From the NCBI GenBank assembly GCA_025594325.1, contig JANHCV010000006.1, positions 1,426,001 to 1,490,000 on the forward strand: 64,000 nt of DNA, written 5' to 3'. The notes under the pieces were generated by a model. That model ran no database searches and had not been told where the DNA came from. It worked only from the letters and a program-made list of their open reading frames with translations. Below are positions 1-7,347 of this stretch, in pieces. Both the position numbers and the translations under genes were made by a program. Each line of letters opens with the position of its first letter. The stretch's first letter is position 1. This DNA is from Blastocladiella emersonii ATCC 22665. Its lineage: Eukaryota; Fungi; Blastocladiomycota.

Positions 1-194
1 GTCAACCGCGTCTAAGCGCGGCCACGCCTCCCCGCCCCACTCTTGCCCACCACGCGGCTCTCCTCCGTTTTGTTCGATGGCGTCGTGTGTGTGTCCCGTC
101 TGTAGCAAATTTCCCCCCTTGATTCCAATGTCATGCCACGTCCATTCAGCTTGCCCTGTCGACCGCCCTGAGGAACTGATCACGTTGCCACGCG

Positions 195-220
195 CGACGC
201 GTCGACGCGTCGACGCGTCG
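195..220. repeat. 26-bp perfect palindrome CGACGCGTCGACGCGTCGACGCGTCG with three ACGCGT hexamers
   Basis: Seen directly about 90 bp upstream of the ATG at 310; ACGCGT at 197, 205 and 213. A regulatory role is unproven. Confidence 0.7.
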
Positions 221-309
221 ACTCGTCGCGTGTCTCGCACCTCGCCACCCACACGCGCTTCTTCGCTGACGTGCCTCGCTTCTTCTCCTGCCCCCGACAC
301 CTGTAAACC

Positions 310-2405
310 ATGAAGCAACCACCACGAGCGCCGCGCTCTCAATGCACCTCGCCCGCATGGGCGTTCGCCCTCGCTGTCCTCCTCGCGCTCGCCGCGCTCC
401 CTTTGCTGATCCGCGCCGCGGACCCGCTGCCGCCATGGCGCCTGTACAACGTCTTCTTCCGGGACATGCCGCAGCTGCACCCGGACTTTGAGGCGCCCTA
501 CGCGGCCGACTACCAGCAGACGGGGATGCTGGACACGCGCGTCAACGGCGACAGCCGGCCCGTGTTCGTGCTCCCCGCAAAGCGGACCTCGCGGCAGCTG
601 GCGAGCCAGTGGATCGATTATGGGAATACCTCGCGGCCCGTGTACAATTACTCGACCAACGTCGCGATCGCGAACCAGGGGCACTTTTTTTTTGACGAGT
701 ACTACACGTACGTCTCTCGACGCGTCGCGGGTTGTGCGATGGCCGCTTCTGACCTGTTTTCGTAGAGACGTGCCGGGCGTCAACATCGCCTTCAACGCGA
801 CGCTCAACTTCACGCTCGACGACCCGGTCCGCGCGACTTACCTGTGGAACAAGACGTCGTTCTTCCCGCTCGACGGCCTCGGGTACGGCGTGCGCGAGGG
901 GTACACGGTCACGGACCCCGGGCTGCCCGCGCAGTACCGCGACGGTATCGCGCGCAACTTTTGGTACACGTACGGCCGACTCGTTCATCATTGGGTACTG
1001 GACGCGTGGGCTGACGCGACGCGCGACTCGGGTAGAACCGAGATGCAGATGACTTTCTACTACCGCGGCGGCGAGATCTTCACCTTCTTTGGCGATGACG
1101 ATCTCTGGTACGCTTTTCGTGTGAGTGACGCATTGGTGGCCGCTAACTGCTGCCGCGGCCAGGGTCTTCATCGACGGCAACCTGACGACGTGCGACGTGG
1201 GCGGGATCCACGCGTCGCGCGCGTGCACCGTCGACCTCGACCGGCTCTCGCTGCCGCTCAACACGACGCACAGCATGGCCGTCTTCCGTACGCCGCGGCC
1301 ACGCGCTTCCCACACGACACACACTAACTTTCCCCCTTCGGTAGACGCGGAGCGCCACACCGACGCCTCCTCGTTCGCCGTGACCACGTCCGTGAAACCC
1401 ATCAACCGTGCGCCGTCCGTGAACCCCCTGTCGGTCACGGCGCGCGCGGGGCAGAACCTGACCATCACGCTGCAGGGGTACGACCAGGACAACGACGCGC
1501 TGAGCTACTCGGTCGTGACGCCGCCGTCGCGCGGCTCGGTGCTGCCGCTGCGCGTCGAGCCGGGGAAACCGCCGACCGTCACGTACCTGGCGTCGGGCGA
1601 CGATAGCGGGACCGACTCGTTCACGTACCTCGCCAACGACGGGCAGGTCAACTCGACGGCGGTCGCGGTCAATGTGACGGTGCTGGCCAAGCGTCGTACG
1701 TTTACCTCTCGATCATCGTGACCGCGCTCAACACTGAAGCGTGGCGCGTGGTGTAGGCCCGCCGGCGCCGCGCAACATCGCAATCAACCTGACGGTCGGC
1801 GACACGATGTGGCTGCCGCTGACGGCGGACGTGTCGGACATAGCGGCGACGGACCTCAAGTGGTTCATCACGGCGAACCCCAAGTTCGGGTACGCGAGCC
1901 TGATCGCCGAGAACGCGACCATCAAGTACCAGGCCATCAACGCGGGCAACGAGAGCTTCCCGTTCGTGGCCACGGACCCGGACAATCTGTCGGGGTCGGC
2001 GCTGGTCGCGGGGACCATCTACGGTACGAGTTTTCGAGAGTGAGGGATGTGATGGTCGGACTGATGGCGCGAGCGTTCGTGTAGCTGTCCCTGTCATCGT
2101 CCCCGTGGGCCTGCCGCCGGGCGTCGTCGCGGGCATCGTGCTCGGGTCCGTGGGCGCGGCCGCGCTGCTCGGGACGGGCGCCGCCTACGTCTTCTACAAC
2201 CGATACATGTCGGCCAAGTTCGCGGCCACGGTACGGATCGTTTGCGGTCGCTGCAGTCCCGATCCTCGCTCACTGTGTGATCTCTCGCGTGGCGTGTGTG
2301 TAGTGGCAGGAGGAGTGGATGAAGAGCAACATCAACGAGAACCCGCTGTTCGTGTCCAACTTCCGCGAGCAGTTCAACCCGCTGTACAACTCGAACGCGG
2401 GGTGA
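310..2405 (+). CDS. Fibro-slime/PA14-domain cell-surface protein with two Ig/cadherin-like repeats, one TM helix and an integrin-beta-like tail (554 aa, 8 exons)
   Basis: Introns 708-765, 970-1035, 1108-1162, 1288-1344, 1696-1756, 2024-2084 and 2231-2303 (all GT..AG) give one open frame. Signal peptide AWAFALAVLLALAALPLLIRA; fibro-slime motifs HPDFE, NFWYTTEMQMTF, GDDDLWVFIDG, GGIH, FHAERHT; Ig-like GYDQDNDALSYSVV...DSFTYLANDG; TM GVVAGIVLGSVGAAALLGTGAAYVF; tail ENPLF...NPLY. Confidence 0.88.
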
Positions 2406-2925
2406 TCCTCGTCGGACATCACACACATAATAGACTGACTGAAGCTTGCACGCGTCGCTCATCCGCCACCGCCACTGGGATCACGCCAGCCAACAACCCG
2501 ACCACCCCTGAACCCGTCCCGTCGTGTTTGTCGATCCCACGCTTCCACGGCGGCGAGGTCGGCTGCAGCATGACGCGACACCTAGAGACCCAATCGGGTG
2601 GCGCGGTGCGCGAAATTAGGGTCGCAGGAGGTCGCATGCGCGCGCGCGGGGCACAGCGTGGGCCGCGACCACGCACCGACCACACGGAACGGGCCGCCGC
2701 CACAACATGCAACCTTGGCCCTCGATTCTCGGCGGCAGCCGACGCTCTCTCTCTCCCGCCCTCGAACAACCGTGAGCGGCAGCGGGCACCGGGCTACAGT
2801 CTCCCAACCTAGAGTAGACGACGGCGATCGCGATAGAGCGCAGGCGCCTCCGACCTCCCACCACCCGCGTCCGCGGCCTCGACCACCTTCCCCACCCGAC
2901 CTCGTTGTTGCAACTGCCGCAGACG

Positions 2926-5099
2926 ATGCCGTCCCGTCCACCCACCCGCGGCGCCGCCACGCCGCCGCCTCCGCACGGGCGCCGCCACTCGACGCGCCGC
3001 GGCTGCGCCACGCTCATCGTCCTCGTTCTGCTCTCCCTCTCTGCCGCCGCGACGCTGGCCGTCGCCTCGCCGGCCGGCCCGACGACCACGACCACCATCG
3101 CGTCCCCGTCGCTCACCCGGCGCCAGCAGCTCACGAACCTCGACCCTTCCATCCCGCCGCCGAAACCGACCATCATCACGCCGACCTGGAGGCCAGTTCC
3201 CGGCGGCGGGGGCGGGGGCGGTTCGCGTCCTCCTCCGCCGCCACCACCGCCCGCCCCTTCACCAACGCCGACACGGCGCAAGGACGAGGGCGACGTGCCG
3301 TTCGTCACGGACGGGCCGATCGGCGGGCAGCCGGCGCCCGTCGACCGCACGCCGACCGTGATCGGGAACATGGGGATCGCGACCAACACGAACCCGCCCC
3401 CGCCCCAGGTCAACTTTCTCAACCCGGGCGCGAGAGTCGCGAACCCGAACCCGAACGAGCGGCCGCCGCCCGACGAGCTTGTTATGCCCACCGTGTGGCC
3501 GACGCGTACGTTCTTGCATGGACTGCCGTGACCATCTTGATCTGAAACGCCTCGCGCCGCTGTCGTGTAGTCGCCGAGCCAACATGGCGCATCCGTGCGA
3601 CCACCTCGGCGCCGGCGCCCGCGACGTCGACGGGCTCGCCGCAGTCCAAAGCCCCCGGCCCGGACCCGAGCAACAACAACGGCGGCGGGCGCAGCCAGAT
3701 CGACGTGACCGTGAATCCGGACCCGGTGCCGACCGAGATCCCGCGCGCGCCCGCGAACGCGACGCCGCCGCCCAACTTCACGGGCGTGCTGATCGTGCCG
3801 CCGCTCGGCTTCCTCTCCACGTCCTCCGCGCCGCCGCTGCCGGGCGCCACGACGGCGACGGCGCAGTGGGTCGGCCCCGACGAGATCGGCCCGATGCCGT
3901 CCCCGCCGGTGTGCGGCGACGGGCGGTGCGATATCACCGAGGGGTGCGCGCGGTGCGCGCAGGACTGCTCGTTCTCCAACACGGTGGCCAAGCCCGCGCC
4001 CGGGTTCCTCGGCGACGTGTACAGCGGCGGCGCCAACGACCCGGTCTCGGTCCACTTGCACTGCAGTATGCCGCAGTTCACGCAGTTTTGTCCGTGGGCG
4101 CCCCCCGCTGCCGACGCGGCGGCCGTCAACGCGTCCGCGTCAACGACGACCACGCCGTCGGCGATGCTCATGGTCGCCGGCGACACGCACCCGAGCACCA
4201 ACCACACGCCGTTCCTGCTCGACGTGCTCGGCAAGCGCAGCGTGCGCGCGGCCGTGTTCCTGAACCCGGCGCGGCTCGTGCGGCCCGAGGCGTTCGAGGC
4301 CGAGCCCGGGGACGGCGGCGACGCGGTGGTGGACGCGCGCCGCGGCGAGTTGGCGGTGCAGACGCGCAAGCTCGTCAACGCCGTGTACGAGGCGGGACAC
4401 ACGGTCGGGCTGCTGGTCCCGACGCCCGGCCAGCCGTCGCTCGCGGCGCTCAGCTACCTGTTCCGCGTCCACTCGATGCTCCCGCGGTACCGCGCGTTGC
4501 CGGACTCGGACCGGCGCACGCTCGGCGAGGTCATGGACGCGGCGCGCGCGGGGGCCGATGCGCCGCCCAAGGAAGCGGCGGGTGCGGGCCCGGGTCCGCT
4601 GTACCTCGGCGCGTCGCCGCTGCTCGCGGCCAACACGACGGGCAGCGAGGCGTGGACGCGTCTGGTCCTCGCTCTCCGCGCGTCGGTCGTGGTCCCATCC
4701 ATTCTCCTCGGCGATGCGGACACGGTTGCGAACGAGAAGGACGCCGAGAACCGCCGGGTCGCGACGCGCCGGTTCATCCGCGGGCACACGGGGATCCACA
4801 ACGGCGTGCCCGGGTGGATCATCGGCGTCGACGCGGTGAATGCGGACTCGATCGCGCTCGTCGAGACGGCCATCGAGGCGATGGACCCGAAGGCCGCGAG
4901 GCTCGTCAACGCGTCGGCGTGTCTCGGGCGGTTGCTGAACGTCGCGCTCAACGAGTCCCTGTTCGACCAGGAGGGGCAGCGCGAGCTCGACTGGTTCAAC
5001 CCGCGGCGGGTGCCCGCGCGCGTCTATATGACGCCGCTGTGGAACGTGTCGCTCACGGCGCCCGCGGTCATGCGGGATGTCGGCGCGGGTGATGGGTGA
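2926..5099 (+). CDS. Secreted or anchored Pro/Thr-rich protein with a Cys-rich module and a degenerate NodB-type polysaccharide deacetylase domain (702 aa)
   Basis: Intron 3506-3570 joins ORF 2905 to ORF 3705 in frame. Hydrophobic N-terminal segment; CGDGRCDITEGCARCAQDC; HTPFLLDVLGKRSVRAAVFLN and VYEAGHTVG match the NodB LLDIL/ATFF/GHEIG pattern, but the catalytic residues are altered. Confidence 0.7.
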
Positions 5100-5399
5100 G
5101 GTGTACGATATATCCCAGTTTTGTTGCGAGCGACTTGCTTGGATCGGCGAGATTCGCGCACCTCAGCGTCGAGTACGGAAGGACCACCTGGAGGACCGCC
5201 GTGCGTTGCGGCACTCGCGCCGCAATCAAGAGGCGCAGCGAGAGCTGGTACAAGAGCGACGGCGGCGGGTAAGTCTGAGCCCTCGCTCTCTGGCACGGTC
5301 CTCCTCTCATACATGTATGGCGCTCGCGGCAGCGGTGATGAAGCGAGATGCACGCGAAAACTGACCCTCACCCCCACTTTCACAGCCCCCGACCTCACG

Positions 5400-5828
5400 A
5401 TGCGCGACTCTCTCTGCGGCGACTCTCCCCGCGCCCAAGTCAAGTTCTTCCTGCTGTTCGCGGCGCTGATGCAGGTGATCGTGGCCGCGGTGATCGGGTT
5501 CACGGCGACGACCAAGGTCGACGACGAGTCCAAGAAAAAGTCCGGCCAGCTTCTCGCACTCGTGTTCGCCGGTCTCGCGGCCTCGTTCCTGTACGGGTTC
5601 CTCTGCGTGGTCAAGAGCTGGTACCGCGGGTACTGGGTGTTCATCGCGCTGTACGCGGGCACGCTCGCGGGCGCCGTGTACGTGGCGCTCGACGCGCGCA
5701 CGGTGCCGACCATCTGCGGCGCGATCATCGCGGCGGCCTGGATGGTCAAGCTCGTTACGTTCGGGCGGGATATGGAGCGGATCGATAAGGAGTACGACGC
5801 GGCACGAGGGCAGGCTGCCGAGGCGTAG
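5400..5828 (+). CDS. Small four-TM membrane protein of unknown function (142 aa)
   Basis: ATG at 5400; GC3-rich codons like neighbouring genes; four hydrophobic segments and a charged C-terminus. Confidence 0.6.
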   Translation: MRDSLCGDSPRAQVKFFLLFAALMQVIVAAVIGFTATTKVDDESKKKSGQLLALVFAGLAASFLYGFLCVVKSWYRGYWVFIALYAGTLAGAVYVALDARTVPTICGAIIAAAWMVKLVTFGRDMERIDKEYDAARGQAAEA

Positions 5829-7347
5829 ACGCGAGGGTGGTTGACGTGTGCTTGAGAATTCACGCTGTTTGCATCAAGACATTGGGCTGGCTGCAGTGTG
5901 AGAAGAGGAGAGAGGGTGGGAGGAACGCGTCCGGGGGTTAGCTCCACTCCGGGCGCGCGCCGCGGAGCTCAGCGTGGCGCTCGCTGTGGCGCCGCTGGTG
6001 AAAATCTCAAACGCTTCATCCTCTCGCATCACCTCGCCGAGACCGCAGATCCCGCCGTCCCCAGCTTCCCACCCTCTCCCACACGCACCGTGTCGCGGCG
6101 CTTGCCGCATCGTTGTTCTGGTGCGCTCCCACCCTGCGCCACGGCCTCGGTTCCCGCGCGCCGCGTCGCGCGCCCCCTCCTTCTCGCCGCTGACTTGGCT
6201 CCAGATGGCGAACCAGCGGCCGGCCTCGCCCTCGCCGCGCGCGACCGCGCCGCCGATTGCTGCTCGAGGACAAGGGACTGCGCGCGATTCACACCGGGCG
6301 GCGCCCGTCATCATCAGCGGCGCTCGCGTGCGCCTGGACAGCGGGCGGCCGACGCGCACTCGGTTCCCACCCATCATCGCATCGGGGCGGGGCGGGCAGG
6401 GGCGCGCGCGTCAGAGGCGTGGGTGCGTGCCGCGCCGCCGCCGTGCCGCTGCTCCGTGATGACCCATTTGGAGCTTGCCCCCTTGATTGCCTGCCCGCTG
6501 CCTGCTTGCTTGCCGTTCCGGCCGCCCGCCCCGCCTGCCCGCGCGCCCGTTGCAGGTGCAGCTGACGCGACTCGCCCCGCCCGCCCTTCGCTCCACAAAC
6601 TCGCGCCGCCGCTGACCGAACCGCTCTCGCTCTCCTCCAGGACGCTCGTCTCGCAGCATCATCTATCCTCTCGCAGCGCGCGGTTCTCGGATCCTCCTCG
6701 CCTAGCGCCCGCATCTCTTACCCTCCTGTCGACGACGACGAGCGGCTGTGGCGCGTCGCCAACCTGTATCGTTACCCCCGCCCATCGTCTACCCGCGCAT
6801 CTCCTTCTCGTACGGATCTCGCGATACACGCCTGGCTGCGACGGCGACGGCGGCTGACAGTCGTCTACGCGCGCGGGTAGATCCTTTCGCGCCATCGCCG
6901 CGCTCGCCCGCCCTCCATCACCACCTCCACCGCGGACCCGAGGTGCGTCTCGCTCGCCTTGCGCCGTCCACGGCACGCTCAGGCCGGCCTGGGAGGCGTT
7001 CATTCGCATCGCAGGCCCGCCCAACGCGTACCGCTCGCCACGCGTCCGTGCAGATTGAGCTAACGAACGCATGCCCGCCGCCTTTCCTCCACTCCACTCC
7101 TCGCCCTGCGCCTCTGCCGCGCACCGGCACGTTCTGCGCGCTCGCACCCTCCCCGTCGTGCGTGACCGTGCTGTGCTGTTCCACTTGCACGCTCCGCGCC
7201 CCTGCCGTTGCTCTGCTCGCTCGCGACGCGTTTCGGTTGCGCCACCTCGCCGCGCCGCCGCCGCCCGCCTGACACGCGCCGGTCGCGCTGACTCCAACTC
7301 CATCTCCATCCCCACCACACGCGCGCTCACACAACAACCACACAGCC

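What the first reader, a model, noticed from the sequence alone, without database searches (positions are those of the whole stretch)
310..2405. Integrin-beta-like cytoplasmic tail on a fibro-slime/PA14 + Ig-like receptor in a probable fungus
Seen: after the single TM helix, the last exon encodes KFAATWQEEWMKSNINENPLFVSNFREQFNPLYNSNAG. Established: integrin beta tails carry two NPxY/F motifs (beta1: ENPIYKSAVTTVVNPKY) that bind talin and kindlin, and Dictyostelium Sib proteins have such tails. Here the two motifs have the same 8-residue spacing and the same preceding E. Fungi are generally considered to lack integrins, and fibro-slime domains are best known from Fibrobacter/myxobacteria and slime moulds. 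Inference: a non-integrin, carbohydrate-binding adhesion receptor may plug into a talin-type adhesome in a zoosporic organism.
Basis: partly seen in the sequence, partly recalled or inferred. Interest (0 to 1): 0.85.

Follow-up and report, generated by a model that had tools for sequence, protein, structure and literature searches.

The report
Fungal lectin-like receptor with integrin-like tail
A water mould relative (Blastocladiella emersonii) has a membrane receptor with a sugar-binding-type outer part and a short, strongly conserved inner tail that looks like the tail by which animal integrins grip the cell skeleton, so it is a concrete candidate for the 'missing integrin substitute' of early fungi, though binding has not been shown.

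Summary
Window 310-2405(+) is an 8-exon gene whose 554-aa product is identical to NCBI protein H9P43_005798 of Blastocladiella emersonii ATCC 22665. It has a signal peptide, a fibro-slime/PA14 domain, two Big_9 Ig/cadherin-like domains, a Gly-rich TM helix and a 45-aa tail with NPLF, 8 residues, then NPLY.

In 5.8 billion proteins the family has only 11 cluster representatives: Blastocladiomycota, the aphelid Amoeboaphelidium and two metagenomic sequences. In all nine intact tails W522, E525, NPL[F/Y], E543, NPLY and the 8-residue spacing are invariant.

No B. emersonii RNA run was listed. The last-exon splice is supported indirectly:
- spliced Paraphysoderma transcripts;
- the same intron position in Allomyces;
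- an uninterrupted TM-plus-tail ORF in the aphelid and in a metagenome contig.

Similarity to integrin beta tails is specific but sub-threshold. Pfam Integrin_b_cyt gives E 0.17. A tail profile puts integrin beta tails on top in the PDB (best E 0.014). It is therefore not a member of that family.

Talin in this genome was not tested. The literature reports talin in Allomyces, and unchecked scan notes list adhesome genes here.

Best reading (about 0.5): a Sib-like, non-integrin, talin/FERM-coupled adhesion receptor. Main rival: NPxY sorting signals only. An overlapping window had already noted this stretch (s1-269690).

The parts
310..2405 (+). Whole gene, start codon to stop. Exons: 310-707, 766-969, 1036-1107, 1163-1287, 1345-1695, 1757-2023, 2085-2230, 2304-2405. 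Product 554 aa.
   Evidence: Only splice combination with canonical sites and an open frame. Identical to NCBI protein P0016, H9P43_005798, B. emersonii ATCC 22665.
310..420 (+). Signal peptide region (residues 1-37)
   Evidence: Strongest hydrophobic segment at residues 16-34. Helix 16-33 in the model. This is the least conserved region, 22% mean pairwise identity.
421..1397 (+). Fibro-slime / PA14-like lectin-type domain (residues 38-284, split by four introns). The TIGR02148 core is 953-1397. The invariant GDDD is at 1091-1102.
   Evidence: TIGR02148 88.5 bits against cutoff 45, E 3e-25. PA14 in 7 of 8 orthologues. The domain model has pLDDT 88.8. Its best PDB fold matches are sugar-bound PA14 of the Marinomonas RTX adhesin and the Epa and Flo adhesins. 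The core is 64% conserved.
1404..1679 (+). First Big_9 / cadherin-like Ig domain (residues 287-378)
   Evidence: Pfam Big_9 44.4 bits against cutoff 23.6; Cadherin_4 34.5 bits. Foldseek matches to tandem cadherin/Ig ectodomains.
1780..2089 (+). Second Big_9-like Ig domain (residues about 392-474, crosses intron 2024-2084)
   Evidence: Weak Big_9 hit on exon 6 alone, E 0.0021. Second Big_9 stretch in the full-length scan. Beta-sandwich with pLDDT above 90.
2120..2194 (+). Transmembrane helix (residues 485-509), Gly/Ala/Ser-rich with a GxxxG-type pattern
   Evidence: Continuous helix 484-529 in the model. 6 Gly and 13 small residues of 26 here; 3-6 Gly in all orthologues.
2195..2327 (+). Membrane-proximal tail helix (residues 510-529, crosses intron 2231-2303), with Phe518, invariant Trp522, invariant Glu525 and Trp/Phe526
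   Evidence: Alignment A2. Helix continues from the TM in the model.
2231..2303 (+). Last intron (73 nt, GTACGG...TGTAG, phase 0), lying directly before the Trp522 codon
   Evidence: The same position is spliced in Paraphysoderma transcripts and annotated in Allomyces. The intron is absent in Amoeboaphelidium and in a metagenome orthologue, where the tail is contiguous with the TM.
2340..2351 (+). Membrane-proximal NPLF motif (residues 534-537)
   Evidence: NPL invariant, F or Y in all nine tails. Aligned to the NPxY/F of integrin beta2, beta7 and beta1 tails.
2376..2387 (+). Membrane-distal NPLY motif (residues 546-549), 8 residues after the first
   Evidence: NPLY and the spacing are invariant in all nine tails.

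Best explanation
The gene encodes a type I surface receptor restricted to Blastocladiomycota and aphelids. A lectin-type fibro-slime/PA14 head on two Ig/cadherin-like domains would bind extracellular carbohydrate (substrate, host or prey surface). A Gly-rich TM helix runs on into a membrane-proximal aromatic helix (F518, W522, W/F526). It is followed by a disordered stretch carrying NPL[F/Y], 8 residues, then NPLY. Most likely this tail is a docking site for a FERM/PTB-type adaptor, above all talin. That would couple the receptor to actin in wall-less zoospores or germlings, as integrin beta tails do in animals and Sib tails do in Dictyostelium. Shown here: the gene model, the architecture, the family range, the strong constraint on the tail, and a weak but specific sequence resemblance to integrin beta tails. 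Inferred: sugar binding, surface location, and talin or other FERM binding.
For: - Architecture and topology. There are 14 N-glycosylation sequons in the ectodomain.
- The tail is the second most conserved part. The NPxY half is 56% identical on average, against 32-34% for the Ig domains and TM. Ten residues are invariant and the 8-residue spacing is fixed across nine tails, from Blastocladiomycota to an aphelid.
- A profile of the tails against 177,635 PDB sequences puts integrin beta2 (E 0.014) and beta7 (E 0.041) tails on top. Six of the 8 hits below E 10 are integrin beta tails, aligned at their extreme C-terminus.
- Integrin_b_cyt is the only Pfam family to hit the tail. The aphelid tail alone finds only integrin beta7.
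- The model shows a TM plus proximal helix and then a disordered NPxY region, as in integrin beta tails.
- A Gly-rich TM and two NPxY motifs are also the defining features of SibA, whose proximal NPxY binds talin A (PMC9197732, PMC3279395).
- Talin is reported in most zoosporic fungi analysed, including Allomyces, which has an orthologue (P0017), and was proposed to serve zoospore crawling (bioRxiv 10.1101/2020.06.12.142943).
- Lectin receptors with integrin-like tails are discussed as talin partners in Entamoeba and Acanthamoeba (PMC12686525).
Against: - There is no binding, expression or localisation evidence for this protein.
- Integrin_b_cyt is far below Pfam's threshold (12.1 against 23.4 bits).
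- The B. emersonii tail alone finds no integrin in the PDB, nor does the second Paraphysoderma paralogue.
- The Trp that talin F3 contacts in integrins lies 4-5 residues before the Asn of NPxY. Here the conserved aromatics lie 8 and 12 residues before it.
- The HDRxE motif and the Ser/Thr-rich kindlin stretch are missing.
- The family is absent from Chytridiomycota and Neocallimastigomycota, which do have talin (PMC5042518). It therefore cannot be the general fungal talin receptor.
- Talin in B. emersonii itself rests only on an unchecked scan note.
- NPxY motifs are also generic sorting signals.
Confidence: 0.5

Rival explanations
1. The two NPx[Y/F] motifs are only endocytic or recycling sorting signals, as in LDLR, LRP1 and megalin. 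The protein would be a lectin-type cargo, nutrient or surface-turnover receptor with no link to talin or actin.
For: NPxY is a classical sorting signal, and tandem copies occur in LRP-type receptors (established knowledge). The similarity to integrin tails is carried mainly by the motifs themselves. Single-sequence searches are weak or blank. Even integrin and SibA tails are subject to endocytic sorting (PMC3279395).
Against: The canonical [FY]xNPxY form, with an aromatic two residues before Asn, is met at neither motif. Constraint extends well beyond the motifs: the fixed 8-residue spacing, invariant E543, W522 and E525, and the proximal aromatic helix. A simple sorting tetrapeptide does not need that. 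This reading does not exclude the main one.
Confidence: 0.3
2. The tail is a true evolutionary remnant of the ancestral opisthokont integrin beta tail. It would have been moved as a separate exon onto a bacterial-type lectin/Ig ectodomain after integrins were lost in fungi (homology, not convergence).
For: In three blastoclads the tail from W522 onward is a separate phase-0 exon. Profile hits to integrin beta tails extend a little beyond the motifs into the E/K-rich proximal part. Tail length (45 aa) and position at the extreme C-terminus are similar.
Against: All scores are sub-threshold. The aphelid and the metagenome orthologue have no such intron. About 30 alignable residues cannot separate homology from convergence on the same partner. 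A word search with the TM plus tail found no other carrier of this tail.
Confidence: 0.1
3. The conserved tail binds some other partner not considered here, for example a MyTH4-FERM myosin, a signalling adaptor, or a TM co-receptor through the GxxxG helix. The likeness to integrins would then be coincidental.
For: The invariant W522/E525 helix has no counterpart of the same register in integrins. Unchecked scan notes list MyTH4-FERM myosins in this genome. The GxxxG-type TM suggests helix-helix pairing.
Against: A MyTH4-FERM partner would still be a FERM-type, actin-linked coupling and so close to the main reading. There is no positive evidence for any specific alternative.
Confidence: 0.1

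Closest known systems
Dictyostelium Sib proteins (SibA-E)
   Same: Type I membrane adhesion receptors in an organism without canonical integrins. They have a glycine-rich TM helix and a short, highly conserved cytosolic tail with two NPxY motifs, and the proximal one binds talin A (PMC9197732, PMC3279395, PMC12686525).
   Different: The Sib ectodomain has a von Willebrand A domain and repeats. Here it is fibro-slime/PA14 plus two Big_9 domains. No sequence comparison of the tails could be made here because no Sib sequence was available by reference. Talin binding is shown for Sib and untested here.
Integrin beta cytoplasmic domain (Pfam PF08725)
   Same: About 45-aa tail: a membrane-proximal helix followed by NPx[Y/F], 8 residues, then NxxY at the extreme C-terminus. 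Integrin beta2, beta7 and beta1 tails are the best PDB matches to the tail profile.
   Different: Below Pfam threshold. No HDRxE motif, a different Trp register and no Ser/Thr-rich kindlin site. No integrin beta ectodomain. No alpha-subunit partner is shown.
Entamoeba Gal/GalNAc lectin and Acanthamoeba mannose-binding protein
   Same: Lectin-type adhesion receptors of amoeboid cells that have talin but no integrins. Their tails are described as integrin-like or NPxY-bearing and are proposed as talin partners (PMC12686525, discussion).
   Different: Unrelated ectodomains and lineages. Those proteins have demonstrated roles in adhesion, whereas this one has none yet.
PA14 lectin adhesins (Marinomonas MpIBP PA14, Candida Epa, yeast Flo1/Flo5) and bacterial fibro-slime proteins
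   Same: The head domain is a fibro-slime/PA14 beta-sandwich with an invariant GDDD stretch. These are its best fold matches. Myxobacterial fibro-slime proteins are its best sequence matches outside the family, at about 35% identity.
   Different: Those are wall-anchored, GPI-anchored or secreted proteins without a TM helix and cytoplasmic tail. TM-scores are low (0.25-0.35), so the sugar-binding site is not established here.

Membership tests
Integrin beta cytoplasmic domain (PF08725) | Score above Pfam's gathering threshold | tested here: not met
   12.1 bits against 23.4, E 0.17 for the tail exon. Three of 8 orthologues match, best E 0.076.
Integrin beta cytoplasmic domain (PF08725) | Membrane-proximal NPx[Y/F] and membrane-distal NxxY about 8 residues apart | tested here: met
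   NPL[F/Y], 8 residues, NPLY, invariant in nine tails. Aligned to the integrin motifs.
Integrin beta cytoplasmic domain (PF08725) | Membrane-proximal HDR(R/K)E motif, Trp 4-5 residues before the Asn of the first NPxY, and a Ser/Thr-rich stretch between the motifs | tested here: not met
   Alignment A2 shows Y-x-[RK]-Y...K-F-x-x-x-W-x-x-E-[WF]. The aromatics lie 8 and 12 residues before the Asn, and the stretch between the motifs has no conserved Ser/Thr pair. The integrin features themselves come from established knowledge.
Integrin beta subunit | Ectodomain with PSI, hybrid, beta-I (VWA-like) and EGF domains | tested here: not met
   Only fibro-slime/PA14 and Big_9/cadherin-like domains were found.
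Integrin beta / Sib functional class | Tail binds the talin FERM F3 domain | not testable with these tools
   No complex prediction tool was available and no talin sequence could be fetched. Talin presence rests on the literature for Allomyces and on scan note s1-076920 for this genome.
Dictyostelium Sib-type receptor | Type I topology, glycine-rich TM, conserved tail with two NPxY motifs | tested here: met
   Signal peptide, 14 sequons in the ectodomain, a single TM with 3-6 Gly in all orthologues, and the conserved tail.
Dictyostelium Sib-type receptor | Extracellular von Willebrand A domain | tested here: not met
   No VWA hit in Pfam in any of 8 orthologues.
Fibro-slime domain (TIGR02148) / PA14 (PF07691) | Score above the curated cutoff, and PA14-type fold | tested here: met
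   88.5 bits against 45. PA14 in 7 of 8 orthologues. Foldseek top hits are PA14 lectin domains, E 2e-5.
Big_9 bacterial Ig domain (PF17963) | Score above the gathering threshold | tested here: met
   44.4 bits against 23.6, two stretches.
LDLR-type endocytic signal [FY]xNPxY | Aromatic residue two positions before Asn | tested here: not met
   That position is N/S/Q/R/V before the first motif and Q/N/A/S/H before the second. Where an aromatic is present it lies directly before the Asn.

The most novel reading that the evidence does not exclude
This family is the long-sought integrin substitute of blastoclad and aphelid fungi. It would be a lectin-headed receptor, built from bacterial-type domains, whose conserved tail recruits talin (with vinculin, paxillin and MyTH4-FERM myosin) to couple substrate or host-surface binding to actin in wall-less zoospores. 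That would give the 'orphan' fungal focal-adhesion scaffold a receptor.
Probability: 0.4. Interest if true: 0.85.

Novelty: new variant of a known kind. Interest (0 to 1): 0.7.

Why it matters
Early-diverging fungi keep talin, vinculin, paxillin and other focal-adhesion scaffolds but have no integrins. [quoted passage not shown] Talin has been proposed to serve zoospore crawling (bioRxiv 10.1101/2020.06.12.142943). Recent work argues that talin force coupling through non-integrin receptors is the ancestral mode of eukaryotic adhesion, and calls for tests in more lineages (PMC12686525). This family gives a specific, conserved and short tail that can be tested directly against fungal talin. It occurs in lineages with parasitic members (Paraphysoderma, Coelomomyces, Amoeboaphelidium, Catenaria), where surface recognition of the host matters. 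None of the papers reached by the searches here describes this family.

Tried and rejected
- RNA-seq confirmation in B. emersonii failed. The run search was busy three times, then listed no RNA run and only three DNA runs of the source sample.
- A word-index search with only the TM plus tail found just the protein itself and Catenaria. This says little, because E-values for 58 residues against 5.8 billion sequences are very strict.
- A protein-language-model look-up of the TM plus tail gave only generic single-pass tails such as MUC1 and syndecan, all below the useful score.
- Foldseek with the whole model was dominated by cadherin/Ig tandems and did not see the head. The head was modelled separately.
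- phmmer of the head against PDB sequences gave nothing.
- Single tails against the PDB: B. emersonii and the second Paraphysoderma paralogue gave no integrin hit.
- Four papers were not held: Sebe-Pedros 2010, Cornillon 2006 and Prostak 2021 in its journal version. No Sib tail sequence could be compared.
- Chance origin of the motif pair was rejected (and conservation).
- Intron retention was rejected as the real product: read-through gives an unconserved Arg/Cys-rich extension, while the spliced tail is conserved in nine species.

Full report
**Gene model.** Region 310-2405(+) contains seven short introns (55-73 nt), all with GTACG donors and YAG acceptors. Only one combination with canonical sites gives an open frame of 554 aa that keeps every conserved block. 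The exons are 310-707, 766-969, 1036-1107, 1163-1287, 1345-1695, 1757-2023, 2085-2230 and 2304-2405. The translation is identical to P0016, 'hypothetical protein H9P43_005798 [Blastocladiella emersonii ATCC 22665]'.

**Architecture.**
- On separate exons the signals are partial. On the full protein they are clear.
- Fibro_Slime TIGR02148 scores 88.5 bits against a cutoff of 45, over residues 196-284.
- Pfam Big_9 scores 44.4 bits against 23.6, with two stretches. Cadherin_4 also matches. PA14 matches in 7 of 8 orthologues.
- An AlphaFold2 model (mean pLDDT 82.8) shows the N-terminal beta-sandwich and two Ig-like sandwiches. One continuous helix, 484-529, covers the TM and the proximal tail. 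The C-terminus is disordered.
- Foldseek with the whole model finds tandem cadherin/Ig ectodomains.
- The head modelled alone (pLDDT 88.8) matches best the sugar-bound PA14 domain of the Marinomonas RTX adhesin, then the Candida Epa and yeast Flo adhesins. E-values are from 2e-5, but TM-scores are only 0.25-0.35.
- Fourteen N-glycosylation sequons in the ectodomain, a signal peptide and a single TM support type I topology. The TM has 6 Gly and 13 small residues of 26, with a GxxxG-type pattern kept in the orthologues.

**The tail and its conservation.**
- An exhaustive HMMER scan with exon 1 and word-index searches with an orthologue and with a family profile recover only 11 cluster representatives in 5.8 billion proteins.
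- These are B. emersonii, B. britannica, Sorochytrium, Coelomomyces, Allomyces, Catenaria, two Paraphysoderma paralogues, Amoeboaphelidium (Aphelida) and two metagenomic sequences. The two Paraphysoderma genes lie in tandem.
- The next hits are partial bacterial matches (E 1e-61 and worse). No chytrid, neocallimastigomycete or holozoan appears.
- Nine intact tails align without gaps through the motifs. Invariant are W522, E525, N534-P-L, E543 and N546-P-L-Y.
- The first motif ends in F or Y. The spacing of 8 residues is fixed in every sequence.
- Mean pairwise identity by region: Fibro_Slime core 64%, NPxY half of the tail 56%, Ig domains 32-34%, TM 34%.
- The motif pair is unique in the six-frame translation of the window, and 200 residue shuffles gave none.

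**Is the last exon really spliced in?** No RNA run of this species was listed, so there is no direct evidence. The indirect evidence is strong.
- Two Logan contigs from runs SRR9894651 and SRR9894666 carry the full 550-aa Paraphysoderma orthologue as one ORF. Against the Paraphysoderma genome they lack eight introns. The last of these (L003 6017-6080) lies directly before the invariant Trp.
- The Allomyces gene model has its last exon starting at the same Trp.
- In Amoeboaphelidium the ectodomain, TM and tail are one exon.
- In an ENA metagenome contig the whole 545-aa protein is one uninterrupted ORF.
- Read-through of the B. emersonii intron would give an unconserved extension.

**Relation to integrin beta tails.**
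- Pfam's Integrin_b_cyt is the only family that hits the tail exon, but at 12.1 bits against a 23.4 cutoff (E 0.17). It aligns tail residues 10-28 to profile positions 26-44 of 44. Three of 8 orthologues give such hits, best E 0.076.
- A profile of the nine tails searched against all PDB sequences ranks the integrin beta2 tail first (E 0.014) and beta7 second (E 0.041). Integrin beta1D, two beta1 chains and full-length beta7 follow. Six of the eight hits below E 10 are integrin beta tails, always at the extreme C-terminus of the integrin.
- Single tails give less. The aphelid tail finds only beta7 (E 0.15). The B. emersonii tail and the second Paraphysoderma paralogue find no integrin.
- The resemblance is therefore specific but weak, and it is carried largely by the two motifs and an E/K-rich stretch.
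- Several integrin hallmarks are absent: the HDRxE motif, the Trp 4-5 residues before the Asn, and the Ser/Thr-rich kindlin site. Here the conserved aromatics lie 8 and 12 residues before the Asn, spaced i, i+4, i+8 with F518 on the proximal helix.
- The protein is not a member of the integrin beta family. Whether the tail is homologous or convergent cannot be decided from about 30 residues.

**Partner.** I could not search this genome for talin.
- The preprint of Prostak et al. (10.1101/2020.06.12.142943) reports talin in most zoosporic fungi analysed, including Allomyces macrogynus, which has an orthologue of this receptor. It suggests a role in zoospore crawling.
- Unchecked notes of this scan list talin, vinculin, paxillin, PINCH-like, RSU1-like and MyTH4-FERM myosin genes, and an FG-GAP propeller protein, elsewhere in this genome. 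These are leads, not support.
- In Dictyostelium, SibA has a Gly-rich TM and two NPxY motifs, and the proximal motif is needed for talin A binding. It is the accepted integrin substitute.
- PMC12686525 shows talin force coupling without integrins. It names lectin receptors with integrin-like tails in Entamoeba and Acanthamoeba as further candidates.

**Verdict.**
- The best explanation (about 0.5) is a Sib-like, non-integrin adhesion receptor. A PA14-type lectin head on an Ig stalk would be coupled through a conserved NPxY-pair tail to talin or another FERM/PTB adaptor.
- The main rival (about 0.3) is that the motifs act only as sorting signals. The canonical [FY]xNPxY form is not met, and the constraint extends beyond the motifs, which argues against a bare sorting signal. 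The two readings are not exclusive.
- The family's absence from chytrids that do have talin means it cannot be the general fungal talin receptor.
- None of the papers reached by the searches here describes this family.
- An overlapping window of the scan had already noted the same stretch as a 'secreted' fibro-slime protein (s1-269690). The TM and tail show that it is membrane-anchored.

Noticed in passing
L003:1493-6301 (Paraphysoderma sedebokerense, JAHLJZ010000080.1): Two paralogues of the receptor lie in tandem on the same strand: P0018 at 1493-3669 and the P0002 gene at about 3885-6301. The NCBI model of the second (P0009, 408 aa) is truncated and lacks the TM and tail that the transcripts L001 and L002 show. 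The paralogue tails differ: NPLF against NPLY, and one has a C-terminal extension.
   Followed up: partly
P0001 (B. britannica), P0005 (Catenaria), P0020 (JGI metagenome): Several public gene models of this family are wrong at one end. P0001 lacks the TM and tail. P0005 has a spurious N-terminus and skips the Ig domains. P0020 reads into what is probably the last intron and loses the NPxY tail.
   Followed up: no
window 421-2089, and P0130, P0134, P0031, P0034: Both ectodomain modules have their nearest relatives outside the family in bacteria: myxobacterial fibro-slime proteins at about 35% identity, and Verrucomicrobial 'tandem-95 repeat' proteins. The ectodomain may have a bacterial origin. 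No tree was made.
   Followed up: no
window 180-235: A short GC-rich direct repeat (GACGCGTC-type units, several copies) lies in the 5' flank about 80-130 nt upstream of the start codon.
   Followed up: no
window 2905-5100 (+): The next gene downstream begins with a signal-peptide-like segment and a Pro-rich stretch (ORF 2905-3531). Another scan note (s1-276432) reads it as a polysaccharide deacetylase on a mucin-like stalk. The neighbours of the orthologues in Paraphysoderma, Allomyces and Amoeboaphelidium are unrelated genes, so synteny is not conserved.
   Followed up: no
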